Below, piece after piece: positions 165 to 60,677 of a DNA stretch of 64,000 bases. The stretch comes from Phallusia mammillata (Eukaryota). Position 1 is the first letter of the stretch. Each line of letters opens with the position of its first letter. The stretch lies in contig OZ281496.1 in assembly GCA_965637545.1 (NCBI GenBank), positions 3,782,001-3,846,000 on the forward strand, in the 5' to 3' direction. Position numbers and translations under genes: made by a program. The notes below the pieces were generated by a model. The model saw only the letters and a program-made list of their open reading frames with translations. It was not told the origin of the DNA and made no database searches.

Positions 165-1428
165 CTTTCTTTTACGTTCCAACTCAATCTTCTGAAAGGA
201 ACAAAACCCGGTGAAATGCATTTATTGCAATATATTGCCCTAAGCGGCTTTCAAAGATCAGTAAAGTAGAATTAGTGACTAAAAACACAGCAAGGGCCGA
301 TAACCTTATATTAACTTCAACTATATTGGTATAAAATTCCAAAGAAATAACTAAACAAACAATGGTTTTGACAAAAAGCAACTCCTCAAAATTATGTTAC
401 CATGGATGGTTGTGATGCCGGTGAAGAGGCTGATCCGGAAACATTCTAAAATTTAAATGTAAATGCTAAAAGCATTTTTTTAGAATAACTTGCTCAGAAA
501 TTGTGTTCCCTAAACACCATCGCCCAAAGTTAACCAAAAATGGCAAAAAAATAAAAAAATACACACGATAAGCTGGGATTCTTGGTTCCACAAACTTGTT
601 TGTTGGTTTATGTTACAGCAATGTAATTTATACAACAAAGGTTCTCTCAGTATAAAGTTTTATTTGTTGCTTATATCATATTTTTTGTTAAAATTCACTC
701 AAGTTTTGGAAGGATATTTTCTTTCAGAAAATACAAGTTATAAATTGCAAATTCAACAATTTTCCATTTAATACGTGTCATGAAGATGTAATAAAAACGG
801 GGAAACTAGAATTGTAACTAATATATTTTAGTAGCCTACCGTTTTTTCTTCGATAAATTCGCCGCTTGTACTTGAAGTGTGGATTGGCTGTTCCACTATG
901 TTATCTTTCAAAGTTATTACCTTTGCTTTTTCCGCTAAATCAGATGAAAAAAGAGTATATTCTTAAAAATACCACTGCTTGCACAAAAAATACCAAACTT
1001 GTCTTTAAATTGTAACTGAATCCTTTATTATTCTGTTTGTAACCTACATTTATTTGAAAAATCCAGGCCTACAAAATAACACAAAACTTAAATAAGGTGT
1101 TGTGTTTAAATTATTCTTTGAAAGTTAGACATTATATCTCAACTCTCACGCAAATTTATTAATTATAACAATTATTAATTTGCTTTGCAATATCTCATCG
1201 CCAAGAGAGCAAAACTTGTTGGTTCTAATCCCACCACACTTGTGTTTTACGTATCAATTAAAAACATCAATCTAACTTATTGGAAACCTGGCGACACGAA
1301 CCGATTAAGTTTGTCATTATCCTTCTTCTATATATCACGAACAACATAAACAAAAAACTAACCTTTTTTTGTTGGTTCCCCCATATACGTCGAAGCTTCT
1401 CTTTTGCAATGGTTTAAAACACATGCAC
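165..1428 (-). CDS. Micro-exon gene family member C (partial; runs off the left edge)
   Basis: Phase-consistent AG/GT exons on minus: 1428-1363 (GACVLNHCKREASTYMGEPTKK, phase 1-1), 934-840 (AEKAKVITLKDNIVEQPIHTSSTSGEFIEEKT, 1-0), 445-401 (NVSGSASSPASQPSM, 0-0), 191-165 (KIELERKRK, 0-0). Homologous exons occur at 18692-18789 and 60529-60555. Confidence 0.5.
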
Positions 1429-6900: not shown

Positions 6901-9900
6901 ATGTCAAGTCGACTATTAAAAGCGGCTCTTTTTGTGAGCGCTCTGAGTATGCTCCTCCGAGGTTAGTGACTTTATTGATTTTTGTTGTGATTTCAACTTA
7001 AGTGGTATGCATGATAAGTCAAATTCTGGCAGTACGACAACATTAAGCTTTGCTGTGCGTTTTTCTGGAGGACCACGAGTACAAGCTCAGTAGAAACGAC
7101 CAAAACAGTGGTCGGCAACCGCCGGTACGCGACGAGTTCGTTATCAGGCTGTATAATCTTTAAGGTTTTAAATGGTCTAAAACATTTTGTCCATGTATCC
7201 CGGGGAATACAAACTAATTTAGGTTTTTTCATTGCCAAATATTTGTAGTTTTTTTTAAGACCGGTCCGCGATAAAACTTTAGTTTCAAAAACGGTCTGCA
7301 GTAGAGAAAAGGTTGCCGACACCTGCTCCAAAAGACATTAATGTTGTGTTGCAAATATCACGGATGTTATATAAAGGGAGCTATGGGTCCCGAGGGTTAC
7401 TTAAAGGGGTAATCGATCTATAAAAGGCTGGGAATCACTGTTCTAGTATTGAGAAATCAGAGAGAGTAACACGAGGACAAAAATTCAGGCCCCACATTGA
7501 TTAGATATAGTTTAGTATTTAAAAAAATATTTTCTACTTTAGTATTAATGCGACATCTTTAGGCGAGCATTCTTCTTGGCTAATACGTATATATCAAGGG
7601 AAATATTGGTTGTGGCCAGGAGAAGTCCTGCAAAGCATCGTTTTCAACTTGATATAGATTTTCGTTTTTTTTTAGTATCCTATAATGCCGCTTTTCGTAT
7701 TTTTTGCAGCTGAAACTGCTTCCTAGCATAATAAACAGAGTGGCAATATCCATCGTTGCGCCTTTTTTAATTTTTATGTATTTTAGTTGCACACCAACCA
7801 AGTAACATCCCACAAACCCTTTATGTCATACAACAATACCTGGTCATACGGCACAAGGGGAGACTGTCCGTTATATTGTCGAACATTGAAAGATATATTT
7901 TCGTAAATTGAAAACTTTGGAATATGTAGGCTTAAACAAGTAAATTGGGCGAAAATACGCCATGGTGGCGAACAGGCTTGTATGAGAGCTAAAGCTTGTT
8001 AAACAGCATGTTATACTGTTTTACTTAAAATGGTGCTTGTATCATTTAGTTTCCGACACACTGTGTGCAGTGGAGAATGTAAGCGGTGCTCATTATTATA
8101 CAACAATTGCCCCTAACTGTAACACATGGGCCCGACGATTTGTTTCAACTGGAGATTCTTCTCGGTTAATTGCACATTTCCGTTTGGGACAGCTTGCTGC
8201 AAACAACTTTTGCAAGGTAAAACTTTACGAACTTAGTCCTTGAAATGAGCCTAATTCGAAATTCGTCCGTTCGTTTCCGCGTAGGTTCGAATTTCATTTC
8301 TTTCAGTTAGATTTTAAATACTTTCCTAACCTTATGCGCAAATCGTGAACAAAAAACATCTAGATTTACGAGGGATCCGACGACCAAGGTAAATTAGCTG
8401 GAACGTTGGAAGGTGGAGGCTTATCTTTTCCAGTTATCGTTGAAAGTTCGTCTGCTTATATATCTTGTGTCACAGACCTCACATCGGAATCTGTGTCGTT
8501 TTGTCTACAACCATGTAAGTCAGGCTTACGATTCATTTAAAACCGAAACTTAAAGCATATATTGTAGATGAAACATGTTTTCGGGTCGATATCAGCAACA
8601 AATAAAATGATGTCAAATCTATTATTTTGCAGACATTGAAAAAAATAATAATTTGCAAACATAGTTTTAATGTAAAAAAATCGCAGTTGATGAGCACTTT
8701 TTAAACAGTGGTGATATTCCATTGCTTATCGGATCGACAACTACACATAAGTCACAGAAAATCGACAACACGATGGTCAAAACAATTGCTTGGAACTATT
8801 TTACCAGCTGTGTTGTCTCAAGCTAAACTTTTTGTGTTTTATAGTTACTTCGTGCGGGGAAGATGTTGCTGATATACCGTACAATTTACTATCTCCGATG
8901 TTTCCTGGTAACTACCCCAACCTTGCTGGTTGTATTTGGAGACTTCAAATGAATTGCAGCACAACCTTATTGTTCCAATTTTCCTCATTTGACACTGAAA
9001 CCAACTACGACATTCTATACGTAAGTGTCTTAACTTATAATATAACCTAAAAATCCAGGAGATATTGACAACGCATATAATCGAGTGGAAACGGTTTGTT
9101 ATCTGTGGGACATTTCCTGCCGCACGCACTGAAAGTAATACATGATTAAGTTTTTTTTTAAATGTATTTTAGAGTAACATATTTATTATAAACTGATTTT
9201 GCAGTGCGAAAAAGTTCACTTCTAATATTGAGGAAAGCAATAAATTTGTTTAAAGTGAAATCCTATTTTTGTTAAGCGCCTAACTAAATGATGAAAAACT
9301 TGCGGCTTTAAGAAGGTATGCGGCCTTTTATGACAAAAAGTGCGCCCCCCCTGCGGCATAATGTTAACATTCCTGAACATACGAAAAGTAACTAAATGGA
9401 GTATTGTTTTCAGTTCAAGAACGAAGAGGGTATTGTGGACAGATTTTCTGGGACGCTTCGATCATCTGATTACACGATGACAGCAACAAATCTTACTGTT
9501 GTGTTTTTGACCGACGGTAGCGGGCAATACAGAGGATTTAATGCGACAGTAGGTGAGGCAAATCTTCTTTCAGGCACACAATTTTGACATGCAAATAATA
9601 ATAATACACTTGATCTCAGCTAGCATGGGTTGTGGTACGATGTAAAAAAACTTCAATATTTATTTTAAAAACTAAGATCTAGTCAATAAGATAACACCGA
9701 ATAATTGCGACAAGTGCTATAGATTTCCTTTTGGTTTAGCTAATTACATTCTAGAGAGTTCCCCACGGGCTCTTTTGACATCAAGTTCTTATTTTTGGTT
9801 CTGTCTCACCAAATTACATCATTTTGTTAGTTCGCTGATGCCAAGCTGTACCATTTTATATGATAAAAATGCGGGGTAAATAAAATCCATTAAATTATTA

Positions 9901-13272: not shown

Positions 13273-13754
13273 ATGAACTTTTTATTATTCTCATCATAGC
13301 ATTGTTTGTGTGCATGTAAATAACTATTTACTTTTGAAGATAAAAACAAATAACAAATTAAAGCTGTTTTTCATTTAAAAAAACGCTGTTTAAAATTTTG
13401 TAAATAAATATTATGCATCATTTCACTTAATACATGCATCATTCATAGCTAAAGTGCTGACATGAAATTAGTTGTCAAAGTATTGTTGTGTATCTGTTTA
13501 ATTGTTATGTACAATATAATCACATAGGGTCAAAACTGTGTCTTTTGGCTTAGCTTATGCAATGAATCAGGAAATAACATTTTCAATTATTTTAGCGCGG
13601 TAGCCTCTGTTGAGCGTGGTTATATTCACCTTTGAATCTCATTTATGGTATTTAATTTAACACAAATTAAACCCATAACAAAATGATTTTTGTCTGGGGG
13701 TCACTAACCCTATGCCCGCTAGACTAATTCTTAAAAGAGCCGGTTGGGCACCGT

Positions 13755-15280
13755 TGGTAAAACCAGTCAAGTTGAGAACTAAAGCTAACCACCCGTGTTA
13801 GGAAAAGAGGGTGGGGTTTAACAGGAAAAGAAACCACCCAAAGAAACCCTGTTGGATAGTTTCAGGCGCCGAAAGAAAGGATGCAGCACAAAACACAGTG
13901 ACGATATTAAACAATATGTAGTTTTACTACATTACTAAAAAATGGCACAAAAAATGCAAGCAGAAGTTTCAAAAGAGATTGGGCCCTGTTTTTGTTTGAA
14001 TGAAAATCATGACATGCTAATTTGAACAAAGCCACTTTGACAATAGCACAAAACAATTTATATAAACGCATTGCTTCAACACGTTTATACTTATGTTCTG
14101 AACTGGTAGCCTTTGAACCATTTGGTTATCTTAAGGTAGCACTCGGGTTTTAAAAAATGTAAATAACACGATAGTTTTGAAAGCCTAATTTCCGTACGAA
14201 TTTGAGCAATAGATAGTGTTTGTTACAAACAAGGTGTTGCATGCTTATATTTAAAGATTTCATATTATAATCTTGGCTAGTTATATTTCGATGTATATGG
14301 TCGATTCCAATTTCTTCTTTGTAATCCATTTCACACACGCAAAAATCAATATCTGCCGGTCTGGAAAATGCAGTAGGCCTGCGTTCTGAAGATTTCTGTG
14401 TTTCTTCTTCCAAGGCTTCTGTCGCCAAGTTGGTCCCCATTGTATTGATAAATGCATGGCTTGGCTCTTGATACACATTAAACATTATTCATATTTTGTT
14501 GTGATGTGTGGTTGTGTAATGCAGTAAAAACAACTATCTGATTTTTCTGTGTTTTATAGCTCTTGTTAATTCAGTACAACAGGTTTGAAGTACCTTATGT
14601 AGACCTGAAACCGCTTGTTTATTTGTTGGTCTGAACAATGTGTGGACATTTCTGATTAGCAGTAAGGAAAACCTAGACAACCAGTTGCAACCGGTACGAA
14701 ACCAGCCAAATTACAACTATAATTTGCTTTAAATTTGATTATTTAAAGAAGAATATATTTTTTGACATTGCAGATTTACATGTTAGTACAAGTAGCTTTC
14801 CACCTACAATTTTTAACGTTGTATTGAAGGTGTTATCTAATGTCGCGTATAAACCAATTTAATCGTGATATTTATTCATCAACGCGGGAAACACCTTTTG
14901 TATATGGCACAGTATACTAAAAGGTCATGCATGTCTGTAGGCAATATGCTACGTTGCTTTTGAACTCACTCTTTGGTGAGCACCCTCACTCAACAATTCT
15001 GATACAAAAATTGCAACACAAACCGAAGTGTGTTGGAAATTATGCGGTATATTTATAACGTTTTCGGGTAGAATGCCAGTTTACAATACGATAAAAACGA
15101 TCTCAATTTTTTTTTTCGATCGAGTTATATCACGTTCTCGTACATTGTTTTGACTGATTTCACAAAACAGAAACATTTTAAGTCCTGACATTGCAGGCAT
15201 TTATTACACAAATCGTATACAGCATAAGAGTTTCTGTATAACAACCACATGTTCTTGTTTATGTTGAAAGGGACAGTGTA
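13755..15280. other. ~1.5 kb segment present only in the left duplication copy
   Basis: Flanks align to 41340 and ~41545, with a much shorter, different sequence between them in the right copy. Contains an inverted fragment of the micro-exon family terminal exon (14668-14722). Confidence 0.5.
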
Positions 15281-16926
15281 AGTAACACATTTTGAGTGTG
15301 ACACATTGCAAGATGAAGTACTAAGCCACACTAGAGCAAAGAGTACCGGAAGTCAATCGGGAAAACTTTTCTCAAAAATTCAAAGTAATAAAAATTCTGT
15401 TATTCACGATTTAATGGAGATTTATTAATTGATTGGTTAGTTTTATGCCACAGCAAATACAAGACTAGTATTTTCGATCTTTTTAAATTTGTTTCCAAAA
15501 ACATTACAGAAAGCAAAATGTCGCACGTGCCGCAAAATTTTAAAACTGATCGGTATTTGGGAAACTAGGTAATGATGTAGAATCACGTTTTGTACAATTT
15601 AAAGTCTATGTGCCCAGGGTTTTTTTAAGATTTGGTTTGGGTGACCGCTAAGTAGTTTTAAGAGACCGCAAGTGTTTCATTTAAATACCAAAAACTGTAG
15701 TTGTAGTTGCAAGTCCAAATTTTGGGAAACCGCTGGAGAAAACACCTTGAAAAAACACTGCATGTGCCCTGAAATTAACGATAACGGGTGGAGCCCCGAT
15801 ATATTCCCTAATGCAGCTGGTTGTGGCGAATTCCTCCCCTGTTCTCATCCCTTTGCATTCGCTCTTGTGCTGGGGCTCCATTGGGGTCGAAATGGTCAAA
15901 GGCGATTCGTGCTAAAATATGAGGAAAAATTGCTTAAATGAAGAGTTTTTATATTAAACATGGTGTTTATTACCCTTGTTTTGTGGTGGTCGGTTATGTC
16001 GGTCGGATTTTACCTTGGGTAAAACCTAAAACGGAAAATGTCATCAAAGTTTTTATATTAAACGTATCCAATGTTTTTCTGAGATATTGTTGCAAAGCTA
16101 TGACCACTAAAAAATCTCAATCAAAATCATTGAGTTTGCAAAACAAATATTTTTATTTGTTAAATACTGATAATAATTCAATACTTCATGAGAAAATGTA
16201 ATTCTATTTCAAAAATGTTAAAGCGTTTTGTGGGGAGTAGAATTAAATTCCCAGCAAAAATAAACTGAAACATCATTTATTTTCCTACTTGATCTACGGT
16301 AGCTTAACTTTATGTGGAATGCAAATATGCTGGATAAATCAACTAACTATTGTAATGAGTTTGATATGACTGGTCAAAATAATTCAATCAGTTGTTAAAC
16401 ATAATAACTGATAAGAATGTATAGAAAATCTGGTCTGAATACAAGGTCAGCAAACACGAAAAACCTTAACCAGAACTGAACTGATTTGTGTTTTGCAAGA
16501 GCTATCATAAAGGGTATGTTGACACCTTCACAAAGTTTTTAACTAGACATTTTGAGTAAGTTGGTTACTAGTCTACGTTGTCACTAGTGTTCGTGTAAAT
16601 TTAGAGCTACAGCATTTGCCTGTTTATGCAAATAAATAGTTTATGTAATTAATTTGTGACTTAATGAAGTCATACGTTTGTTTGTTTTGGCAGTGATATA
16701 CATGCACGACAAAATGCACCACACTAATCACTAACTTTTAAACTTATTTACTTACATTAGTTTCCAAATCCTAATCCCCGAAGCAGTTCCCGTCCCACCC
16801 AAATTCACTGTCAACATCAAAATCATCTGGAAAATAAGAGTCGAGGTTCTTTGATTTTGAAGGAACCACTTTATCTTTTTTCTGACAAAAACACAAAAAA
16901 AGAATGTTTAGATCTTTTTTAAATTT

Positions 16927-17013
16927 TTTTTCGAACACTATCTGTTTGAAAATTTAACGGTTAACAAATTCATTTTCGAACACTATCTGTTTAAAAATTT
17001 AACGGTTAACAAA
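16927..17013. repeat. ~45-bp tandem duplication
   Basis: TTTTCGAACACTATCTGTTT(G/A)AAAATTTAACGGTTAACAAA occurs twice. Confidence 0.8.
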
Positions 17014-17249
17014 ATAGACGTAAAAAGCGACATGCTTTATTTTTCAACCGTTTCGGCTAATGCTCATTTCACCATCAGTGACGTGAAGGGCCACATCAGT
17101 TACACCCGTTTATACCCACTTAAGTCACGTAAAAGAATGACAAAAAGGTGAAACAAGTGTCGCTTAAGAATAGTAGATAAACAAGATTTGGGCACTTATT
17201 TTTGTCGTTAGATCATTTTAGTTTTATAATTTGAATGCATTCTAGTCAA

Positions 17250-17303
17250 TTCGAGAAATTCGAGAAATTCGAGAAATTCGAGAAATTCGAGAAATTCGAG
17301 AAA
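17250..17303. repeat. 9-bp minisatellite (TTCGAGAAA)x6
   Basis: Read directly from the sequence. Only two units are present at the paralogous site ~43396. Confidence 0.9.
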
Positions 17304-19110
17304 ACTCTTCGTGTGTTTTCCAGAAAAAGGGTTATCAGAAGCGGTAACCAAATTACTAGGAACCAATCAGTTTAATTGTTACTCAATCAACCATCATCAA
17401 TCGTGAATATGGTTTATTCTAATTAAATATGTCACTATCGTCAAATACCAACGTGTGATCCTCGGCTTTTGCGCTGCTGGTTTTTTTTTGAAATTATTTT
17501 CTGTTTTGCTGAAAACAGAAATGCTTCATTAAATACTGACACTTTTTGATACGTTCGTGACTAATCAAACGCAAAATTATGGAAGAGATAATGACACCAT
17601 ACATCACGACAGCTTCACACTTTGCATAATTCAGATAAGTGGCGCAAAGAGCTGGGTTATTAATTTAACAACTAAAGAGGGATAGGATTGGGAAGTACGT
17701 TTCTTTTAAATTTTAAATTGCGAACTAACTTTTTAAGTTAGTGTTATTGAACTGGTGATGATAATGCCTTACCCCAACCAAAATAACCCTATCCGTCAGC
17801 ATTTTTAGAGATATATACAATCAGAATATTTACTCATAATTACGTTTCAAGCAAGTTCAAGACGACGTACAAATATTCAAGCGGCTTTTTCCATCGCTGG
17901 AACAAGAAGTGTTTGAAAATGCAGCAGAGCACACTCCTTATGGAAACACTAGCCATGTACAAGTCTGTTAGAAAAATATGACCATGAACTCTTTATAAAG
18001 TGTCGTTTTTCTCATACTTACTTGAACCTGAACAGAAACCCACAAAATTATTACCAGTATACGTACAATGGCTCCTTAACTTTGATGTTTCCTGGTTAAT
18101 GATTTTCGGATTCACTGGTACTTGTACTAGCAACAAAAAAAGCTTCTATTTTTTTGAAAAAGATATTTTTTATTACTTCTTTATATGTCTCAGAATTTAT
18201 TCGCGATCGATGTTATGTTTGAAAAGCAGCTAATTTTAACTTTCTATCTTTTGTAATTTGATTTTTATCAAACAAGCCTTTTTCAACGAAACCCAGTGTG
18301 TTTGTTCAATGTACGCAAATAGACAAAAAATCTACGAGCCTGAATTTCCTATTACCTGTGTATTGTGGCGGTGAGGACATGCTGTATTCATTTTCACCGT
18401 ATTTGACATTGCATGAAACCTAGATGACAAATCATTTTTTTAACGTTTTACTTTTATGTTTGATTGCTAAATACAAATTAAAGGAGAAAGACAAATTTTC
18501 TCTTAAAATTTCTTTGCATTTTTTACTACAAAGAGCTTTCTTACCCATGAATGATTGTTTTGGTAATTTAATAAGCAACGTAGGTCCTCGCAGTATTGAA
18601 TTTTACTTGTTTATTATTATACGTGATGGTGGAATGAAAACAAATGAAGCATAATTGTTAATTAATAGTGTCATTATTTTAATTTCTTTACCGGTTTTAC
18701 TACAACACTTTCGGTACCAGCATTCGGAATGTTGATTGGTTGTTCCACTGTTTGATCTTTTAAAGTTAATTTCACCGTTTTCTTTTTCGCTATATTACAA
18801 AAAAAGTTTACTTTTTAATGCTTACATTAACCAATGTTTTGCTTTTCAATAAACAACTTTAGATCATATAAAATGTGGAAAACTGACCTTTTTTAGTTGA
18901 TCCCTTCATATTTTCCGAAGCTTCTTCTGTTTGTGATCGTTTTGAAACACGTGCATCCATAATTTAGGCAACAGACTGAGCAATGTGAATACTAACACGC
19001 AATCAATGACTTTGCCGGTTTAATGTTGACTACTTAGGTTTTGTAGTTGACAGGTTGAAAAATAAAAATGTCTAAAAAGCTAAGACGGTCTTGGAACACT
19101 GCAGCACAAG

Positions 19111-33757: not shown

Positions 33758-34415
33758 CAGTGGTCGGCAACCGCCGGTACGCGGTCGGGTACGAGTTTCT
33801 GACGGGTTCGTTATCAGGCTGTATAATCTTTCAGATTAAATGGTCTAAAACATTTTGCCCATGTATCCCGGGGATTATAAACTAATTTAGGTTTTTTCAT
33901 TGCCAAATATTTGCAGTTTTTTTTAAGACCGGAAAGCTTTAGTTTCAAAAACGGTCCGCAACAGAGTTGCAAGCGGGCCCGAAATCTGAGCCCGAAACCG
34001 GCCCGAACCCGAAAGTATGAGCCCGAAGCCCGGCCCGAACCCGAAACGTTTTTGCGAAGCCCGTTTAGGCCCGAAATTTTGATTGACAGGATGAGAAAGA
34101 AAAAAGAGATAGACAACAAATACAATGATCAATAGTAGACCATGGGGTAAACAATACGTTTTAGAGTAGAGTGGGCATTAGGTCAAAGCCAGAGTTTCTT
34201 AGCCGAGTGATTTTATTTTGTTTTTTTAAATGGCGGACACGGAACGTAAAGTCAGGCCCGTTTTAAGCCCGTTTTCTCACAAATACCTAAGCCCGAACCC
34301 GGCCCGAACCCGGCCCGAACCCGGCCCGAACCCGGCCCGAACCCGAACCCGGCCCGAAAAGCCCGGCCCGACTTGCAACTCTGGTCCGCAATAGAAAAAA
34401 GGTTGCCGACACCTA
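33758..34415 (-). mobile_element. hAT (Charlie-like) MITE, ortholog of 7106-7325, interrupted by a nested element
   Basis: Same TIRs and flanks as 7106-7325, split at 33961/34384. Confidence 0.8.
33962..34383. mobile_element. Young GC-rich hAT MITE (422 bp) nested in another MITE
   Basis: TIR CAGAGTTGCAAG / CTTGCAACTCTG. Perfect 8-bp TSD GTCCGCAA (33954-33961, 34384-34391). Subterminal GGCCCGAACCC arrays. Absent from the left copy. Confidence 0.9.
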
Positions 34416-40017: not shown

Positions 40018-41860
40018 AACGATGTTTATTGTCCGTAGCTTATATACAAACTAAAGAGTATTTAAACCCTCTTGTATGGTTCAGCTGATAGGGTAATAGC
40101 ACGGAAAATACGCCGTGCCGTGGAGGAATGCTTGGGAGACCGGCCCTTAATCGGCCTGGCGCACTATGGATTATATATATGTGTGCCGTGATCGCCTTAA
40201 TTCGGTATGACGCCTTTAATAAGACTGGTGTACGATGAAATATCAATATTAGTATAATTGTTTTGTAGTCTTGTTCTGGTAAGAAACGACGATCTGTTGA
40301 AGACAATGGTCGCAATCAACTACTTTCTGCAGGGCCAGTGCACATTGTAGTTTTCGAAATATCTTCCCCTTGTATAGTACTATGTCTTGCTGACTACTTA
40401 CGTATATGTTCATGCGATGAACTTGACTGGTAACAATCCCACCTTTTATTTAATTTTCATGGAAGGGCACATATGAAAGGTAAATAAAACAATAATTATC
40501 GTAAAACATATTTCATGGGTTCGAATCCCATCACTAATTTTCTTTTTCTTGTATCCGTTGCTTTAACAACCAGACCGATTCGCTGGCCTCTTGCAATCTT
40601 GACATATACTGCGACTTTCATGGGTATAACCAACACATGTCCGCTTCAGTGCTGACTACATCGATATATAAGCAGTTATTTACCTATTTTTATCGTTTTT
40701 TTGTTAAGCATGACCTTTTTTTTATCTGTTATACAACAGAAGAAAGAAACGAAGCTATAGAAGGTGCTGGCAACAGCTACCAACTTGTGATGTTTGTTCT
40801 TCTGGCTGTAATTATTATCGGAGCTGGTTACATCGTATGGGGCAAACTGAACCAGGATCGCAATGCGAGACAAAATCGACTGTAGATAAATGTTTTAGTA
40901 TTCTCATCATGGCTTGTTAATCTGCATTTAAAAGCTATTGCCTTTGAAGATCAAAAAACAAATAACAAATTAAAGCTGTTTTTCATAGGGCTGTTTGTTA
41001 GTTTAGTTATCAAATAAATATTATGCATCAATTCACTTATTACATGCTTCATTCATAGCTGACATGAAATTACTTTGTCAAAGTATTGTCGTGTTTCCGT
41101 TTAACTGTTGTATACAATATAATCAGATGGGCCTTTGAATCCTTTGAATTAGCTGATATCATGAGTCAGAAAAAAACATTTTTAAATATTTTAGCGTGGT
41201 AGCCTGTGTTGACCGAGGATATATTGGCCTTTAAATCTCATTTATGGTAATTAATTCAACACAAACAAAACCCATACCACCGTCCTCAAAAAGGCTTATT
41301 GTCTAGAAGTCACCAACACTATGCCCGTTAGACTAATTCTTAAAAGAGCCGGTTGTGCCTCCAGTTTACACAATAGGCTACGCCTCATGACGATTCTTTT
41401 TAAAGTGGTGCAATAGGTTTATCTAACCATGGACAATTAATACTTAACAAAGCATTATGTAACAATCATGGAATTCGACTGTTACGTCATACGCGCTATA
41501 ATAAATGGCAGTTGGTGAACAAAGTGGTACCTGGAATGCTAAACTGATGTAACACATTTTGATTGTGACACATTGCAAGATGAAATAATAAGCCACACTA
41601 GAGAAAAGAGTACCGGAAGTCAATCGGGAAAAACTTCTCAAAAATTCAAACTAATAAACATTCCGTTATTCCCGATTTATGGAGATTTATTAATTGATTG
41701 GTTAGTTTCATGCCTCAGGAAATACAATTTGTTCCCAAAATATTACAGAAAGCAAAATGTCGCATGTGCTGCAAAATTCCAAAACTGATCGGTATTTGCG
41801 AAATTAGGTAATGATGTAGAATAACGTTTTGTACAAATTTACAGTCTATGAGCCTTGGAA

Positions 41861-44800
41861 TTAACGATAACGTGTGGAGCCCCGATTTCTTCCATGATGC
41901 AACTGGTTGTGGCGAATTTCACCTCTGTTCTCATTCCTTTGCATTCGCTCTTCTGCTGGGGCTCCATTGGGGTCGAAATGGTCAAACGCGATTCGTGCTA
42001 AAATATGAGAAATAATTGCTAACATGAAACACAGAGTTTTTATATTAAACATGGTGTTTATTACCTATGTTTTGTGGGGGTCGGTTATGTCGGTCGGATT
42101 TAACCTTGGGTGAAACCTAAAGAGGAAATTGTCATTAAAGATTTTACTGTGAACGCAGAAAATTGATTAAGTACCATTGTTATCAAACGTATTCAATGTT
42201 TTTGTCAGACATTGTTGTAAAGCTATAACCACCAAAAAAGTTCAAATAAATCATCAGATTCGCAAAATAAACATTTTTATTTGTTAAATACTGATAATAA
42301 CCTGAAATGTCCTGTAAAAATGTCTTTCTATTTTAAAAATGTTAAAGCGCCTTTTATGGAGTAGAATTAAATTCCCAGCAAAAAATAAAAAAATGAAAAA
42401 TAAACTGACACATCATTTATTTTCTTGCTTGATTCACCATGGCTTAACGGTATGTGGAATGCAAATTTGCGTAAGAAATCAACTAACTATTGTATTGACT
42501 TTACCGGTCTAAAGCAAAATAACTGAATCTTTTGTTAAACATAAAAACTGATAACGAATGTATAGAAAACGTGGTCGGGATACAGGCTCAGCAAACAGGA
42601 AAAACTTCGACACAGAACTGAACGTTACAAAGCAGCAAATTAAACCAATGAACGTGGGCAATGCCAAAACTATCACAAAGTTTTTGACTAGTCAAATTAA
42701 GTAAGTTGGTTTCTAAGTTAGTCTGCGTTGTCACTAGTGTTTGTGCCTTCACATTTAAAGCAATCACATTTGCCTTGTTGCGTAAATAAATAGTTCATAT
42801 ATTTAATTTGTGTCTTTATGTAGTCAAACGTTTGTTTGTTTTAGGCAGTGATACAAAACGCACGAAATTAATCACTAACTTCCAAACTTATTTACTTACA
42901 CTAGCTTCCAAATACCTAGGGCAGTTCCCGTCCGGTCCAATTTCACTGTCATCATCATAATCATCAAATAAAAACGAATCTAGGATCTTTAGACTCTTAG
43001 ATTTTAATGGAGCAGTTTTGTTATTTCCTAAAGAAATAATGTTTAGATCTTTTTTGTGTATTTTCTTTTCAAACAATAAAAAAGAAACGAAACAAAACGG
43101 ATTGGTTTTAGAACACTATTTGTTCACAAGTATATTGATGAAAATAAAGATCCAAATATACTTAAAAAACGACATGCTTCATTTATTAACCGTTTCGGCA
43201 AATGCTCATGTCATCATTAGAGATAAGAAGGGCCACATCAGTTATACCCGTTTATATGCACTTGAGTCACGCAAAACAATGATAGAAAGGTACGAAATAA
43301 GCGTCGCTTGGAAATGGCAGATAAACAAGATTTGGGCTCTTATTTTTGTCGTTAGATTAATTGTATTTTAATAATTTGGCATGCATTCTAGTCTATTCGA
43401 GAAATTTGAGAAAACTCTTTCCGTGTTTTCCAGAAAAGCGGATAATTTGAAGCAGTTAACAAGTAAATTGGATGCCCTTCAGTTTTACTGTTACTAAATA
43501 AACCATCATCAATCGTGATTGTGGTTTATTCTAATTTAATACTATCGTCAAATACCCACGTGTGGTCCTCGGCTTTGGTGTTGCTGGTTTTGGAAGTTTT
43601 GAAATTACTTTCTTTTTCGCTAAAAACAGAAATGCTTGATTAAATAATGACACTTTTTGATACGTTCGTGACCAACTGAACGCAAAAGTACAGAAAAGCT
43701 GATGACACCATACACCATAACTGCTTCACTCTTTGCATAATTCCGGTAAGTGACACAAAGAGATGAGTTATTAATTTAACAGCTGAAGAGGGGTAGGGGT
43801 AGAAACACTTTTTAAAGTGTCGTTTTTCTCATACTTACTTGGGACTTGAGACTTCTTGGTTTCGTGTTTTAAAGTTTTTGGTATTACTTTCTGTTTTGCT
43901 AATACACAGTTGTGATTCAAAATATTTTATCATTTACTTTCCTTCCAAACAGAAATCCACAAAATTATTAACTTACCAGTATAGGTACAATGGCTCCTTA
44001 ACTTTGGTGCTTCGTGGTTAATGATTTTCGGATTCACTTGTACTTGTACTGGAAACAAAAAAAGCTTTAAGTTTGTTTTGTTTTTTCAAAGTTTTTGTTA
44101 CTTCTTTATAAATAGATGTAAGTTCAGAAATACCACTTAGTCGTTCACCCTTTAGTTTAAAAGATATATATATATTTCGCTAATACAGCATCGTCAGTAC
44201 CTTATTCAAATGGAATCCTTAAACCAACTATTCTTTATAAGTCTCACAATTTATTGATTGATGTTATGTTTGCAAAAGAGTTATTTTTAACTTTCTATCT
44301 TTTGGAATTTGCGTCTTTGGTTTATACCAAACAAGCCTTTTTCAACGAAACCCAGTGTGTTTGTTCAATGTAACTTACGCAAATACACAAAAAAGCTACG
44401 AGCCTAAATTTCCCTTTACCGTTGTATTGTGGTGATGAGCTTGTGTTGCATTCATGTTCACCGTATTTAACATTACATGAAACCTAGATAACAAAATAAA
44501 GCAGAAAGACAATTTATTTCTCAAAATTTCTTTACTTTTTTAATGAAAAGAGATTTCTTACCTTAGAGTACGGATTACTTGGTGGTAGAATGGCGCCCTT
44601 AGCAAAATGAAAACAGCATTAGAGGCACATAGGAATTTTAATTGTGAAATACACAGTTCAATTTTATTAACTCAGGCTTGGTTATTTACATAGTAATCTG
44701 AAAGAAAATAAGTTTAGATGGAAAAGACCCAATAAATAATGACCGATAAAATTGGAAGAATTCGAAGTTTGTTCTACTGTTAAACTTTTCACCACGCTTT

Positions 44801-47368
44801 GTTTTTACGATTTTTTAATTTTCACTTACCATTTGGGGTAGAAAGTATTGTTGTGAAACAGACGGTGCCTGGAAATAAACATGTGAATGATTTTTAAACT
44901 ATTTACTGACAAGGAATATTTTTATGAAGCTTTCCAGGTAATATGTTAAATGTTTAATAGAAAATTTGTCTAAAATAATTTTGCTGCTCGTTTTTTTATA
45001 AGTAACCCAGAACGAAAGCACCGAAATATTTTTTATAATTAAAAATATACAATTTGGAAATTTGAATAACGATTACGAACATTTAAAGCCATGTTGCGCA
45101 TCTACTCTGGTTTACATTTTTTAGAGTAATACGAAATTTAAAATGTTGAAAATTTGTCGACGCAAAAATTCAATTTATAAAACGTGTTTTGTACTTAAAC
45201 CGACAAAATTACTTCTTGACAATGTTCTTACCATCATCATCTGACCGGCTTGAACCAATGGATTGTACTGCGGCTAAAAATCAAAAAAATAAATTGAAGA
45301 TAAGTCTTTTAGAAGGTCTTTCTTAGCCAAAGACAAACTTGTATCTACATTGTCGGTTTATCCAATTGTTATTGTTGTAAAATTCAAGAACAGCGAACAA
45401 ACATTGGTAACGCAGCAGGTGTCCCTTAGACCAGGGGTCGGCAACCTTTTTTGCACTGCAGACCGTTTCTGAAAGTGAATTTTATCGCGGACCGGTGTTA
45501 AGAAAACTACAAATATTTAGCAATGAAAACACATGAATAAGTTTATCATTCCCGGGATATGAATGTAAAATTTTTTAAAGCATTTAACCTGAAAAACTAT
45601 ACGGCCCGGTAACGAATTCCTCGCGAAAAGATACTGGGCCGCGGACCTGCGGTTGCCGACCACTGCATTAGACACATTTTAAATCCTGAAGTTTGTCAAA
45701 ATATCAAAGAAATAACAGAAAACATGTTTGTTAAAGTAGGTCGCCAATTTAGTGTTTATTTGTTTACTTATTTTAGGCGTTTTATTTTTAATAACCTATC
45801 TTGTCAGCAGGGAAGCCTTTATAATCTCCTGAGTAAAAAAAATGTTTTGCTTACGTTTTGTCAATAGCCTATGCTGGTAAAGTAGTTGGTAGTGCAAAGT
45901 GGTTATGTGTTTCATCGTGACATATCTATTTGAGGCTAGCAAAAATAACAACTCACATTTTTAAACGAAATTGAAAAAAATAACTAGAAATTCTGTTCTG
46001 AAGGCTGGACTTGTTTTGATTAAAAACTTTTTTACACTTTCATTAGCAACATAATTTAAAGAAACATTAACTTTAATTAAAATACGCTAATTAACCTTTT
46101 CGTAAAACCATTAAAAATAGTAACAGTCCGATTTACGTGTTTCTTTTTCCATTAATTTTCAGAGAAACGTTTATAATTCTTACCGGTTGGGGCAGAAAAT
46201 ATTGTTGTGGTGCAGCCTAAAATACATGAAGACATTGTTAAGTTTACACTTTTAAATTGCTATTTTACACAAATTATTCCAGTTGACAAAAAATATTTAC
46301 AATTTATTTCGAATCTAATACAAGATTGGGAGGAATTCAATTGACAGTTTTGAAATATTTTATTGAACTCAATTGATTGTTTTGTTTGGTTTTTCAAACT
46401 GTATTTTCCAAGCATCCCATGTTTTATATTCTTAGAATAATTTAAATTGGAAAATACTTTTTGGTTTAAAGAATAAATAACTTATTAGATGCTAACCTTG
46501 TAGTTACTTATTTATGTTCTTACCGGCTGAGGCAGAAACATTTGTTGTGGAGTAGACGGGATCTAGTGATTGCAAAAGAAACAATTTGGTGCATTATCTA
46601 TCAAAGACTTTGCATGTTTAAAAGCTGAAAGACTTTAAGTGTAAAAAATAAAGGCAACTATCACGGTACAGTTTAGGGCTTTTACCGCCAATCAATGTAT
46701 GCACATCTTAAGAAACCAATTACCAACCTTCCCATATCCACTTTACCACGGAGCTAAATTGTGCAGCATACGAGGCAGGCAACGGTGCTCAAATTTCGAC
46801 CTTCGACGAGCTTACCACTGGGCTTGTATAGCGAGACCCGAAAGTTAGTATAGTGGGTTCGAATCCCGGGCGGGCCAGCTTGTTTCGTACTATGTCCAGC
46901 CCCAAGAAAATGCTTTTAGAGGCCGGTTTGTTTCGGTACAAAGCTTTTATACGTCTGGCGCGCTATGAGCATCGATGACTGTTTTACATGAACGCCAGTA
47001 ATAATAGTATGTTGATTTTTTACCTTTTCGGCGTTTAAATTTAGAAACTGGTATGATTCAAACATAATATTTGAAATTGTACTTACCACCATGAAGTTAT
47101 AAGCAGGACGAAATTGACTATTCAGACCCTATAAAAACAATCAATTTAATGCTTTGTGAAAACTGTCCGACATACTTTAAAGAATACTTACAAAGTTTGT
47201 GTAATTCTGCATATTTATTTATAGCGATATGGTTGCTGGCAATCGTTTCAATCCAGCAGATGAATAGTTAATCGCATATAATGGGAAAACTGTGTTGTTG
47301 CAGATATTGTTAACTCTAACTTTAAACAACACCCAGACTTACAACTGTACTTCTGTACACTACAGCAG
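41861..47368 (-). CDS. Micro-exon gene family member B (P/Q-rich then K-rich modules; central part may be disrupted)
   Basis: Exons: 47368-47343 (AAVVYRSTV), 47128-47087 (GLNSQFRPAYNFMV), 46562-46524 (IPSTPQQMFLPQP), 46216-46184 (AAPQQYFLPQP), 45273-45232 (PQYNPLVQAGQMMM), 44868-44830 (APSVSQQYFLPQM), 44597-44562 (GAILPPSNPYSK), 44483-44420, 44048-43977, 43898-43839, 43619-43556 (64 nt, phase break), 42964-42900 (acceptor TG), 42116-42065, 41997-41861 (ARIAFDHFDP...). Most donors are GTAAG. Start exon not located. Confidence 0.62.
45432..45665 (+). mobile_element. hAT (Charlie-like) MITE, 234 bp
   Basis: TIR CAGGGGTCGGCAACC / GGTTGCCGACCACTG. TSD CCTTAGAC/CATTAGAC (7/8). Same family as 7106-7325. 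Confidence 0.85.
46770..46990 (+). mobile_element. tRNA-related SINE-like repeat
   Basis: Box B GGGTTCGAATCCCGG at ~46855. Upstream CAGCATACGAGGCA.GCAACGGTG is shared with ~57465. Confidence 0.4.
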
Positions 47369-49019
47369 CTGTTTATAGCGCGATGCTGGGACAAAAGCCT
47401 TCACTCAGTGGTGGGATCGTATTTCTGCGAAAACAATACATCGCCTAGAAAGGTACGTCACAAATATTTTGACATATATTCACATCGGTTAACGAGACTC
47501 GCAGAATTATGCGCATCATAAACCACTTGCAAAGCTTTAATACCAAACGTCAAGAAGACGATCCAATGCAGTAGCCGTCGTAATTTAATTCTTTATTTAA
47601 GTTATTATTTTTTTGGAAATATTGCACAATTTTCGAAAGTAAGCACTAGACAACATTAATTTGGATAGAAATTTCACGCCAAATATGTTTGCATATAATG
47701 GCTTAAGTATAGTGAATAAAAAACATTAAATCGCGCAACTTCAAAATAATGATCAGCTTATTTTTCGTCTTTCAACTTTCTTAATGTCTGCGCATTGTTT
47801 AACAGTTTAACGAACCATTAAGACTTCCAAGCTTAGTTCCGCAGTAAGGTAAGTTTATTTTAAATTGTTTAAAACGATGTTCAGTGCCCGGTTCGGTGTT
47901 ATATAAAGTTGTCTAAATATCCACCACCGTTAACCAGAGAATAAATTATATTTTTTCTTTTAACTTACGCGGATCACCGTCATCTCTCCCAGCCACATGA
48001 CACCAGAACATCTTACATGTAAGCATCATACATATGACCATAATAATTGTTTATTAATTGGGTGACAGGTAAATTTGATACAACAAAATTTTGGTTGCGG
48101 CACTTAGTTTTCAAATTATCATTATAATATACTCGTTTGACATTTATTTCTCTTCTTGATAAACATATAAATAAATATTTTGTATGTCGCATGAACTGTT
48201 TAATGTGAATGTGTAGCAGCCTCTCTCACTACCGATATCGTGTGCTTTCATACTACAACGAACCGGATAGATTGCCTTCTTTCTCTGACTCTCGTCTTAT
48301 GAGGCGTATTCGCTCATTGTGTTATTCTATTACGATGTACTTTGAATAAACACATCGCTACATTTTGTGACCCTAAGCGTGCAGAAACGTTATTTTTTGC
48401 ATTATGACAGAAGCCACAAACTCAAAAAATGCTGTAGCAGTAAAGTTACCGACGTGCATTAACTTTTTTACATATTTACGCTGTCATCCATCAATCTTTC
48501 CATTTAAACAATAATATAACTACATGTTGTATTGTGCATATTTTAACACAATAAATAACACGATTTTGTTTGGATTTAGCGCTGATTGGGTTTATGCTTG
48601 TATTAAACCGGAGATTAATGGGATATAAAGTTTTCGGCGGGTTAAACGGTTCAAGGTGTGTTACTATTTTTTTTTAACCTGAAACGAATAGAGATCTTTA
48701 TTACAAAGCAATTTTTATTTAACGGAAATCTAGGTTTTACATACCTATGTTTTGCTAGCCAGATGACTTGAACCGTATTGGTATGCTGATGACCAAACAA
48801 TCATATTGTATGACGCATAATTGCGTTTCCGCTTTTCTGTGACGTAACATTGCCCAAGGTACAGGTGTTGTTGTTGTTGTTTTGATTAATAGCCCTGCCG
48901 AGTATTCTTTGTAATGTAAACTGAGTCTGTCTTGCGTTTGCTTGTGTGTTTCTCTTAACAGGTTCTGTTTTATATTTTGCTTTGCAGCTATGTTTTCTTT
49001 CATTACATTGGAGAACAAT

Positions 49020-58835: not shown

Positions 58836-60555
58836 TTAGTTGTTATGAGGCTGGTTTCGTTCCGGTTGCAACTGGTTTTCCGGGTTTTCAACCTCATCTC
58901 CATCCATTGGCGCTGGTTCTTCTGCTGGGTCGAAATGGTCGAATGCAATTCGGTCTAACACATAAACAAATACTTGAAATCGCAAACCAGTATCATGCTT
59001 CAATTTACAGAAAATTAAATCTTAAACACTCTTGCCTAAGTTGAGAGGTGCTCGATTTAAATTTTCTTCTTCGTATTCAACCTTTCTTGAAATCTAAACG
59101 AACAAGTTAAATGGAGAAAGTTAAAATAATAAGTAGATTAAGGTTAGAGATCTCCAACAAAAAAGATCTCCAACAAATTTAAACACTTCACATAAGAGTA
59201 AAAATTTAAGCACAAAAAATGCATATATAAGTTGTTACCTTATAGAATGATATTGGTGTGTGATCTACAATCCCGTAATGCTGGAAAATCAAATAGTACG
59301 TATCGTGTTGTAGGAGATAATCCTAATAAGAGTAGAACCAACTTATTTCGTATGTTTGTTTTTTTGACTTGATTTTTCTATTGAAATACCGATGATTGAA
59401 GTGATCAGCATAGATTTACTGTTTTAACAAAGAATTTTTATTTTTATGAAACCTGATGTTATACAAAAGTGTTATAATATATATAATTTGTTGCCAATGT
59501 TATAGTTTGGTTATTTATGATTATAGTTGTTTCAAATTGAAACGAGCTATTGTGCATAAAATGTGGATTTTGATTTTTGATACAAAGAGGTATTATCAAT
59601 ATATGACTTGCGTTCGAATAAAAAAATGATTCATACTGGTTCATGTTTGTTTGTTTTTTTGCTTCAGAGCTCGCAACGCTTTTTGGCTTCAACTATATTA
59701 AAAGCAAAAATCACTCTAAACCAACGGCGGGCAAAACCCGTATTCGAATGCATGTGAATATAAATGACGGATATAAATCCCCCACGTTGGGTTGTCACAC
59801 TGTGACATAAAATCGATCACCATTTCGACATTACAAATGTTCCCACAATGCTTTAACGACAGTTAATGCTAATAAAGCGTTACACATTCATACTGACAAA
59901 CTTACGATTGTCAACAATTATTAAACACAGTTAATAGTTCCATATGCTGCATGAAATGCGGATTACTCGGAAGCACAATCTTCTTTGGACTTAAATTTAT
60001 TTCTCAACTGTTTTGCATTTTTTACCACAGAATGTGAAATTTTTACTTACCTCCATTTCACGTTCGAACTCCTCCGCCTGAAAGGAAGAAAACAATGTTT
60101 ATTACACGTTATGTCTTTTTATTTTTGTGTTTGTTATGGAATGTCAAACTGTCAGATGTTCTTTCACATGAAGTGAATGTTTAAAATTCATGTTTTTTGT
60201 TGCATGATTTCTATAATGCCAAATTGTTTGATTCTTTTGCCCTAAAATGTTTGATTACTAATTTTCTCACTTCCAGTGCCCTTTCAAAAATTTCTGGAAA
60301 GGAAGCGTTGCGTCAAAACGAATAGTATCACAATCACATTGCCTTTCATGCATTTATCACCGATTCCCGCTATGCTGTGAAGAAATACAATTTTATACTG
60401 ACAAACTGGCTGTCAACAAATGTTAAACATGGTTAATGGTTGGGAGTGCTGCAGGACATGCGGATTAGTGGAAAGCAAATTCCTGTTTCGAAGTGAATTG
60501 ATCTTCCATAACGTAAGTGTTTTACTTACCACCCGTTTACGTTCCAACTCAATCC
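58836..60555 (-). CDS. Micro-exon gene family member D (3' part intact)
   Basis: 60555-60529 (RIELERKRV), 60077-60051 (AEEFEREME), 59280-59239 (HYGIVDHTPISFYK), 59093-59036 (ISRKVEYEEENLNRAPLNL, AG|GCAAG donor), 58954-58836 (DRIAFDHFDPAEEPAPMDGDEVENPENQLQPERNQPHNN*). All phases join in frame. Confidence 0.65.
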
Positions 60556-60677
60556 TCTGAAAGAAGCAAAACACGGTGTTAGGGCAGGTGCAGTTGGGAC
60601 CGCGGTATGGTTTCTCGCACACCGGAAGATTTTCAGGTTCTGCAAAGGAAAGGTTTCAATTAAATGTAGGAAGTAAG

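What the first reader, a model, noticed from the sequence alone, without database searches (positions are those of the whole stretch)
44562..47128. Array of symmetric phase-0 micro-exons encoding P/Q-rich repeats: a MEG-like combinatorial splicing gene
Six consecutive exons of 42, 39, 33, 42, 39 and 36 nt all have lengths divisible by 3, phase 0-0 boundaries and GTAAG donors. Three are variants of one motif (IPSTPQQMFLPQP, AAPQQYFLPQP, APSVSQQYFLPQM). They are followed by phase 1-1 K-rich exons of 72 and 60 nt. Any subset can be skipped in frame. Established: this architecture defines schistosome micro-exon genes, which generate variable secreted proteins. I do not recognise this protein family, and the ORF track misses it entirely, so standard annotation probably would too.
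Basis: partly seen in the sequence, partly recalled or inferred. Interest (0 to 1): 0.85.

Follow-up and report, generated by a model that had tools for sequence, protein, structure and literature searches.

The report
Orphan sea-squirt gene with micro-exon array
A sea-squirt gene with no known relatives encodes the proline/glutamine-rich front end of a probably disordered, non-secreted protein in six tiny in-frame exons, but whether those exons are mixed and matched could not be tested and the resemblance to schistosome micro-exon genes is only partial.

Summary
On the minus strand, six exons of 42, 39, 33, 42, 39 and 36 nt (47128 to 44562) all have AG acceptors, GTAAG donors and phase 0-0 boundaries. 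Three of them encode one motif, PQQ(Y/M)FLPQ(P/M). About 2.3 such candidates are expected by chance in the whole window; 5-6 lie within 2.6 kb.

The six exons join an ATG exon and seven further exons into one open 14-exon, 274-aa model. Two results argue for real coding sequence:
- The three motif exons are 63-77% identical, while their flanking introns are at shuffle level.
- The 3' half has a paralog at 13.4-18.5 kb, with dN/dS 0.38 (p=0.001).

The MEG reading is weak:
- There is no signal peptide or hydrophobic segment.
- Exons of 42 nt or less make up only 31% of the CDS.
- The protein is basic (pI 9.8) and hydrophilic.
- The donors are strong.

Combinatorial splicing could not be tested, because the only runs holding this locus are DNA. 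No homolog was found by HMMER, word-based searches or Pfam.

Verdict: a probable lineage-restricted gene for a disordered protein built by exon duplication. It is modestly interesting.

The parts
47192..47212 (-). E0: putative first coding exon, ATG plus 6 codons (MQNYTNF), 21 nt, donor GTAAGT. An in-frame TAA lies 9 nt upstream and A is at -3. The start is inferred, not shown.
47087..47128 (-). E1: micro-exon, 42 nt, phase 0-0, GLNSQFRPAYNFMV. It contains an ATG that would be the start codon if E0 is not used (for example after trans-splicing).
   Evidence: Run X1 carries one synonymous and one R-to-G variant.
46524..46562 (-). E2: micro-exon, 39 nt, phase 0-0, IPSTPQQMFLPQP (motif copy 1)
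46184..46216 (-). E3: micro-exon, 33 nt, phase 0-0, AAPQQYFLPQP (motif copy 2)
45232..45273 (-). E4: micro-exon, 42 nt, phase 0-0, PQYNPLVQAGQMMM. The E3|E4 junction creates a PPQY (PPxY) motif.
44830..44868 (-). E5: micro-exon, 39 nt, phase 0-0, APSVSQQYFLPQM (motif copy 3)
44562..44597 (-). E6: micro-exon, 36 nt, phase 0-0, GAILPPSNPYSK. Similarity to the paralog stops at its donor, which marks the duplication breakpoint.
44420..44483 (-). E7: 64 nt, phase 0 to 1, Cys-containing (VSCNVKYGEHECNTSSSPQYN), donor GTAAAG. A stronger GTAAGT donor at 44379 would give a 105-nt exon and a stop four codons into E8.
43977..44048 (-). E8: 72 nt, phase 1-1, conserved in the paralog
43839..43898 (-). E9: 60 nt, phase 1-1, K-rich (AKQKVIPKTLKHETKKSQVP). 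A duplicate of E10 and absent from the paralog.
43560..43619 (-). E10: 60 nt, phase 1-1, K-rich (TKKKVISKLPKPATPKPRTT), donor GTGGGT
42900..43027 (-). E11: 128 nt, phase 1 to 0, a basic stretch followed by the acidic patch DSFLFDDYDDDSE
42065..42116 (-). E12: 52 nt, phase 0 to 1
41861..41997 (-). E13: last coding exon, with stop TAA at 41861-41863. An AATAAA lies about 160 nt downstream.
13402..18960 (-). Paralog B. It copies the 3' half only (E7, E8, E10-E13 and the introns, 75-84% nt identity up to 18545). Upstream of that it has three unrelated 5' exons (18545-18960). One open model of 7 exons gives 171 aa.

Best explanation
This is a real, lineage-restricted (orphan) protein-coding gene of an ascidian, on the minus strand from about 47212 to 41861, with 14 exons and a 274-aa product. 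Its first third is a proline/glutamine/aromatic-rich low-complexity region encoded by six symmetric phase-0 micro-exons. Three of these (E2, E3, E5) are old tandem duplicates of one exon, kept alike at the peptide level. The rest comprises a short Cys-containing segment, a lysine-rich basic region that itself contains duplicated phase 1-1 exons (E9/E10), an acidic patch, and a charged tail. The product has no signal peptide or membrane segment, is basic (pI 9.8) and is strongly hydrophilic. I infer that it works inside the cell as an intrinsically disordered, modular protein: a sticky P/Q/Y/F interaction region joined to a basic region that may bind nucleic acid or direct the protein to the nucleus. 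What is shown: the exon anatomy, the open frame, the non-random density of exons, the exon-restricted conservation, and purifying selection on the 3' half. What is inferred: transcription, the start codon, disorder, localisation, and that the micro-exons are mostly constitutive because their splice sites are strong. The frame-neutral layout would allow length variants by exon skipping, but nothing shows that this is used.
For: Exon coordinates, canonical AG/GT sites and one uninterrupted 825-nt frame across 14 exons. Five or six micro-exon candidates within 2.6 kb, against 2.3 expected in the 64-kb window on both strands. E2/E3/E5 cores are 63-77% identical, while 100 nt of flanking intron on either side sits at shuffle level (0.55-0.66 against a null of 0.58-0.60). 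About 40% of core differences are at third codon positions, and four of the five third-position changes are synonymous, so the peptide is conserved rather than the DNA. The 3' module has no in-frame ATG before E13, so it needs the upstream exons for a start codon. Against paralog B, the shared exons give dN 0.133, dS 0.347, dN/dS 0.38 and Fisher p=0.0012 over about 130 codons. The three exonic variants seen in the DNA runs (two synonymous, one R-to-G) leave frame and splice sites intact, and a fourth, 4 nt upstream of the E1 acceptor, leaves the AG intact. No hydrophobic N-terminus, pI 9.81, GRAVY -0.96. Read depth shows the exons are single-copy, whereas the MITE and SINE in the introns are repeated.
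Against: There is no RNA evidence at all. No junction reads exist, and no RNA run of this species holds the locus. No homolog was found in any search, so cross-species conservation is untested. Non-synonymous divergence from paralog B (0.13) is only somewhat below intron divergence (7-18% mismatches), so constraint on the 3' half is moderate. B itself may be decaying: it has lost E9, has a 4-nt deletion in E10 and a stop in E11. A stronger alternative donor in E7 would truncate the protein at about 123 aa. The proposed function rests on composition alone.
Confidence: 0.55

Rival explanations
1. MEG-like gene. The symmetric micro-exons are cassette exons that are included combinatorially, producing many variants of a secreted or surface protein of the tunic, egg coat or adhesive. 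This would parallel schistosome micro-exon genes.
For: All six exons are phase 0-0 with lengths divisible by 3, and E8-E10 are phase 1-1 with lengths divisible by 3, so any subset can be skipped in frame. The gene is an orphan, like MEGs. It lies tail to tail with a CUB-ZP membrane or egg-coat-type gene, and the two were duplicated together. The PPxY motif exists only at an exon junction, so exon choice could switch it on or off.
Against: There is no signal peptide in the model, and no compatible signal-peptide exon in the 1.8 kb up to the divergent neighbouring gene. Only 31% of the CDS is in exons of 42 nt or less, whereas MEGs are 10-20 very short exons with a majority of 15 bp. All donors are strong. 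The product is a basic, lysine-rich protein. No isoform data exist.
Confidence: 0.08
2. Short-product or two-part reading. The strong GTAAGT donor at 44379 is the one used, giving a 105-nt exon 7 and a stop four codons into E8. The array would then make a protein of about 123 aa (P/Q-rich plus a hydrophobic Cys-rich tail) or a transcript targeted by nonsense-mediated decay. The lysine-rich 3' exons would be untranslated or a decaying remnant.
For: GCG|GTAAGT at 44379 matches the donor consensus better than ACG|GTAAAG at 44420, and the 105-nt exon is open in phase 0. The duplication breakpoint lies between the array and the 3' half, which shows that the two halves can be separated.
Against: dN/dS of 0.21-0.28 in E11-E13 argues that the 3' exons are, or recently were, translated. 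In paralog B the GTAAGT donor has been destroyed by a 5-nt deletion while the upstream donor is kept. The 14-exon frame is intact to a TAA followed by AATAAA.
Confidence: 0.15
3. Not a functional gene. It would be a silent or decaying locus, or a chain of exon-like pieces with no product.
For: No transcript evidence and no homolog anywhere. The sister copy B shows decay-like lesions.
Against: The density of micro-exon candidates is far above chance. Conservation of the repeated motif is restricted to the exons. The frame is intact over 14 exons with 13 canonical introns. dN/dS is below 1 with p=0.001. The variants seen are not disruptive.
Confidence: 0.15

Closest known systems
Schistosome micro-exon genes (MEGs)
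   Same: A run of very short symmetric exons with lengths divisible by 3, separated by much longer introns. An orphan gene whose product is rich in Pro, Phe and Leu with basic residues towards the C-terminus. Missed by ORF-based annotation (for MEG features; for this gene).
   Different: No signal peptide. Only 6-7 of 14 exons are micro-exons, at 33-42 nt rather than mostly 15 nt, covering 31% of the CDS. The host is a tunicate, not a schistosome. No sequence similarity was found. No evidence of alternative splicing or secretion.
Vertebrate P/Q-rich SCPP genes (amelogenin, ameloblastin, caseins and others)
   Same: A P/Q-rich, probably disordered product encoded by small exons separated by phase-0 introns. 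A gene built by exon duplication and recognisable by its structure rather than its sequence (PMC9122587).
   Different: SCPPs have a conserved signal peptide and SxE phosphorylation sites, and they lie next to SPARC-L in vertebrates. This gene has neither a signal peptide nor any SxE site. It has phase-1 introns in its 3' half and is in a tunicate next to CUB-ZP genes. Pfam finds no amelogenin, casein or gliadin match.
Repeat proteins encoded exon by exon (titin PEVK, tropoelastin, fibrillar collagen 54-bp exons). From my own knowledge, not tested here.
   Same: One short symmetric exon per peptide repeat, growth by tandem exon duplication, and a frame-neutral layout that permits exon skipping.
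   Different: Those are long arrays within large structural proteins that belong to recognisable families. This is a six-exon array at the N-terminus of a small orphan protein.

Membership tests
Schistosome MEG | The coding region consists mostly of 10-20 very short symmetric exons (6-81 bp, mostly 15 bp, multiples of 3) | tested here: inconclusive
   Nine of 14 exons are symmetric with lengths divisible by 3 (E1-E6 phase 0-0, E8-E10 phase 1-1), which is 423 of 822 coding nt. Only 31% of the CDS is in exons of 42 nt or less, and none is shorter than 21 nt.
Schistosome MEG | N-terminal signal peptide (secreted product) | tested here: not met
   The highest 9-residue Kyte-Doolittle mean is 0.89 in the first 40 residues and 1.48 anywhere in the protein. 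The only hydrophobic ATG exon upstream ends in the wrong phase.
Schistosome MEG | Sequence relatedness to MEG proteins; family restricted to Schistosomatidae | tested here: not met
   No hit of any kind for the N-terminal 84 aa, the central 128 aa or the first 169 aa. The genome is an ascidian's according to other notes of this scan (not verified here).
Schistosome MEG | Protein variation generated by alternative use of the micro-exons | not testable with these tools
   The runs that hold the locus are DNA. The RNA-labelled run laid (X4) matched only repeats, and the other eleven hold next to none of the sampled words.
P/Q-rich SCPP | Signal peptide and SxE (Fam20C) sites | tested here: not met
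   No signal peptide and no S-x-E anywhere in the 274 aa. The definition is taken from PMC9122587.
P/Q-rich SCPP | Introns within the ORF predominantly phase 0 | tested here: inconclusive
   The first seven introns are phase 0. Five of the remaining six are phase 1.
P/Q-rich SCPP | Position in the SPARC-L/SCPP cluster of a vertebrate | not tested
   The neighbours read as CUB-ZP genes and other micro-exon genes. No search for SPARC-like sequence was run.
Known P/Q-rich protein domains (amelogenin, gliadin, casein and others) | A match to the family profile | tested here: not met
   Pfam at E up to 10 gives no family for the 84-aa N-terminal region. E7 and E11 gave only chance-level hits well below cut-off, and E8 and E13 gave none.

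The most novel reading that the evidence does not exclude
An ascidian orphan gene uses its six phase-0 micro-exons, and perhaps the three phase 1-1 exons, as independent cassettes. This would give up to 64-512 in-frame versions of an intracellular low-complexity domain, including a PPxY motif that exists only when particular exons are joined. It would be a convergent, non-secreted counterpart of the schistosome MEG strategy. The 5' array may have been joined to, or separated from, the 3' module by the partial duplication that made paralog B.
Probability: 0.1. Interest if true: 0.55.

Novelty: new member of a known kind. Interest (0 to 1): 0.3.

Why it matters
If the gene is expressed, it is a clear example of how an intron-rich tunicate genome builds a new disordered protein from duplicated mini-exons, and of how a partial segmental duplication gives the same 3' module two different 5' ends. 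It also shows in practice that such genes are invisible to ORF-based annotation and to homology-based annotation. It does not currently bear on any long-standing open question. Its value would rise only if long-read cDNA showed real combinatorial exon use.

Tried and rejected
- **RNA evidence.** Two run searches and the single read-laying run found only DNA runs (X1, X2, and low-coverage X3). These show flat depth over the introns. The tiny RNA-labelled run X4 matched only repeats. No junctions were seen, so splicing is untested.
- **Homology.**
  - HMMER with the last exon (44 aa) against 1.84 billion representative proteins gave 0 hits.
  - Word-based searches with the N-terminal 84 aa, the central 128 aa and the first 169 aa gave 0 hits. 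The candidate length ranges were 46-147, 70-224 and 93-296 aa.
  - The full 274-aa spliced protein was not submitted, because it has no reference and would have had to be typed.
  - The ESM Atlas search with E11 gave only weak, unrelated bacterial clusters.
  - The JGI metagenome scan with the ORF containing E13 found nothing; a first attempt was too short.
  - Pfam found nothing. Rfam and tRNA scans of the window found nothing.
  - A literature search for the peptide motif found 0 papers.
- **Upstream signal-peptide exon.** None was found in a compatible phase.
- **A three-exon duplication unit.** The length pattern 42/39/33 then 42/39/36 suggests one. I considered it and did not adopt it. 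E3 belongs to the same motif class as E2 and E5. The YN(F/P)(M/L)V similarity between E1 and E4 sits at different positions within the two exons.
- **Other copies.** I looked for further copies of the P/Q exons in the window and found none.
- **Ortholog hunting through the neighbouring CUB-ZP gene.** Not attempted. The protein search accepts only candidates of similar length, and single exons would not reach full-length proteins.
Full report
**What is in the sequence**

On the minus strand between 47128 and 44562 there are six short open segments. Each follows a pyrimidine-rich tract plus AG and ends before GTAAG:
- 47087-47128, 42 nt
- 46524-46562, 39 nt
- 46184-46216, 33 nt
- 45232-45273, 42 nt
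- 44830-44868, 39 nt
- 44562-44597, 36 nt

Three of them (E2, E3, E5) carry the motif PQQ(Y/M)FLPQ(P/M).

I scanned the window objectively for units made of AG, an open frame of 27-48 nt divisible by 3, and GTAAG. The scan finds 12 on both strands. Five distinct exons of this array account for six of those entries; E1 falls below the scan's pyrimidine cut-off. Third-order Markov simulations of the window give 2.3 +/- 1.8.

**Gene model**

Adding an upstream ATG exon and seven downstream exons gives one uninterrupted frame of 825 nt.
- The ATG exon is 47192-47212 (MQNYTNF), with an in-frame TAA 9 nt upstream and donor GTAAGT.
- The model has 14 exons and 13 GT-AG introns of 63-910 nt.
- The stop is at 41861-41863, and an AATAAA lies about 160 nt further on.
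- The phases are 0-0 for E0-E6 and 0 to 1 for a 64-nt Cys-containing exon E7. They are 1-1 for E8 (72 nt), E9 (60) and E10 (60), 1 to 0 for E11 (128), and 0 to 1 for E12 (52); E13 follows.

E7 lies between the array and the phase 1-1 exons, and there are three of those exons, not two.

E9 and E10 are themselves duplicates; both begin xK(Q/K)KVI(P/S)K. The 3' module has no in-frame ATG before E13, so it depends on the upstream exons for a start codon.

A gene on the plus strand starts at about 49020 (MGACALLC...). This limits our gene's 5' end to a 1.8-kb intergenic stretch.

**Is it coding?**

No RNA evidence could be obtained.
- The runs that hold the locus (X1, X2) cover introns and exons at the same depth, so they are DNA.
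- X3, labelled as another organism, holds identical DNA at low coverage.
- The RNA-labelled run laid (X4) matched only repeats. The other eleven are tiny and hold almost none of the sampled words.

Three indirect lines support coding.
1. The last ten codons of E2, E3 and E5 are 63-77% identical. The 100 nt of intron on either side are at shuffle level: 0.55-0.66 against a null of 0.58-0.60. About 40% of the differences are at third codon positions, and four of the five third-position changes are synonymous (CTG/CTA, CCT/CCC, CAG/CAA, TAT/TAC). This points to an old exon duplication with the peptide under constraint.
2. The 3' half of the gene has a paralog (see below). Over about 130 shared codons dN is 0.133, dS is 0.347, dN/dS is 0.38 and Fisher p is 0.0012. 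The ratio is lowest in E11 (0.28) and E12-E13 (0.21).
3. The three variants seen within exons in the DNA runs are two synonymous changes and one R-to-G change. A fourth lies 4 nt upstream of the E1 acceptor and leaves the AG intact. None breaks the frame or a splice site.

Read depth shows the exons are single-copy. Two introns hold repeated elements: a 234-bp MITE (45432-45665, 15-nt terminal inverted repeats) and a tRNA-like SINE (about 46760-46900).

**The paralog and the duplication breakpoint**

Window 13402-18545 matches 41012-44562 in the same orientation at 75-84% identity, through introns as well as exons.

Similarity stops at the donor of E6. The intron below it is 86% identical, and the exon above it is unalignable.

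Upstream of the breakpoint, copy B has three different exons instead of the P/Q array: MDARVSK..., then a lysine-rich phase-1 exon, then a 42-nt phase-0 exon.

B has lost E9, has a 4-nt deletion in E10 that is compensated by a shifted E11 frame, and has a stop in E11. One open 7-exon, 171-aa model exists. B's E12-E13 remain open and 93% identical to A, and skipping B's E11 would also keep the frame.

So the same 3' module carries two different 5' ends. Which arrangement is ancestral cannot be decided without an outgroup.

**What the product looks like**

The 274-aa protein has pI 9.8, GRAVY -0.96, and 38 K+R against 20 D+E residues. It has four parts:
- a P/Q/Y/F-rich, uncharged N-terminal 84 aa (35% P+Q);
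- a 45-aa Cys-containing segment;
- a 56-aa region with pI 11.5;
- an acidic patch (DSFLFDDYDDDSE) and a charged tail.

There is no signal peptide and no hydrophobic segment. The highest 9-residue Kyte-Doolittle mean is 1.48, and only 0.89 in the first 40 residues. The only hydrophobic ATG exon in the upstream 1.8 kb ends in an incompatible phase. There are no SxE sites. A single PPxY motif (PPQY) is created at the E3|E4 junction.

From composition alone I infer a non-secreted, intrinsically disordered protein with a sticky low-complexity N-terminus and a basic region. This is inference, not a result.

**Relatives**

None were found; Tried and rejected lists each search. Three limits apply.
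- The word-based protein search needs shared 5-residue words.
- The full 274-aa sequence was not submitted.
- Public RNA data for this species appear to be lacking.

**Comparison with known kinds**

Schistosome MEGs are defined as follows in bioRxiv 10.1101/2023.06.21.545858: 10-20 exons of 6-81 bp, mostly 15 bp and multiples of 3, with a conserved N-terminal signal peptide and secreted products, restricted to Schistosomatidae. Our gene shares the symmetric short exons and orphan status. It fails on the signal peptide, and only 31% of its CDS is in exons of 42 nt or less.

Vertebrate P/Q-rich SCPP genes have phase-0 introns, a signal peptide, SxE sites and a position next to SPARC-L (PMC9122587). 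They share the P/Q-rich, phase-0, exon-duplication logic, but here the signal peptide and SxE sites are absent. The gene is therefore not a member of either family.

It belongs to the general, well-known class of repeat or low-complexity proteins encoded one repeat per symmetric exon.

All six donors have G at -1 followed by GTAAG. From general knowledge, this favours constitutive inclusion. Frame-neutral skipping is possible but unproven.

**Verdict**

The most likely reading is a lineage-restricted ascidian gene for a non-secreted disordered protein built by exon duplication (confidence 0.55). The rivals are the MEG-like reading (0.08), a truncated product or two-part locus through the alternative E7 donor (0.15), and a non-functional locus (0.15).

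Other first-reader notes report further symmetric exon arrays in this genome (unverified), so this architecture may be common here rather than exceptional. Interest is modest (0.3) unless cDNA shows real combinatorial splicing.

Noticed in passing
window 13402-18960 (minus strand): Paralog B shares only the 3' half of the gene, with the breakpoint at the E6 donor (44562 / 18545). It has three unrelated 5' exons, including a lysine-rich phase-1 exon resembling E9/E10. The same 3' module therefore carries two different 5' ends, which makes a chimeric gene by partial duplication a possibility.
   Followed up: partly
window 15808-16025 versus 41861-42116: E12, the 67-nt intron and E13 are about 93% identical between the two copies, against 82-84% in the two large introns upstream of them (E10-E11 and E11-E12). 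Yet copy B has a stop in E11 upstream. Skipping B's E11 would keep the frame (the E10-like exon ends in phase 0). Gene conversion or continued translation of B's tail could explain this.
   Followed up: partly
window 44379-44419: A consensus GTAAGT donor 41 nt downstream of the modelled E7 donor would give a 105-nt exon and a stop four codons into E8. In copy B this donor has been removed by a 5-nt deletion.
   Followed up: partly
window 46184-46186 / 45265-45273 (E3|E4 junction): The only PPxY motif of the protein (PPQY) is formed across the E3|E4 splice junction. It would also form if E2 joined E4.
   Followed up: no
window 45432-45665: A 234-bp MITE in intron 3 with 15-nt terminal inverted repeats (CAGGGGTCGGCAACC). 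Its word depth is roughly 200 times the single-copy level in both DNA runs. Related copies lie at 7128-7337 and 33758-33960.
   Followed up: partly
window about 46760-46900: A SINE-like element with a tRNA-type 3' arm (GGTTCGAATCCCGGGCGGGCC on the plus strand) in intron 1. Its depth is about 60-75 times the single-copy level. ARAGORN and Rfam call nothing there.
   Followed up: partly
window 43176-43372 and 44161-44357: Two intronic stretches have about 10-20 times the single-copy depth, so they are moderately repeated elements. The second lies in intron 7, which is 93% identical between copies A and B.
   Followed up: no
window 60051-60077, 60530-60556 and 165-191 (minus strand): Another micro-exon family: 27-nt phase-0 exons encoding charged E/R/K peptides (AEEFEREME, RIELERKRV, KIELERKRK). 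It is unrelated to the P/Q array.
   Followed up: no
window 47087-44562: The exon lengths run 42/39/33 and then 42/39/36, which hints at a duplicated three-exon unit. However, only E2/E5 (and E3) are demonstrably related.
   Followed up: partly
window 41600-47500, run X3: A run labelled as a different organism holds this locus at low depth with mostly identical sequence. It is probably the same species, or a very close one, under another label.
   Followed up: no
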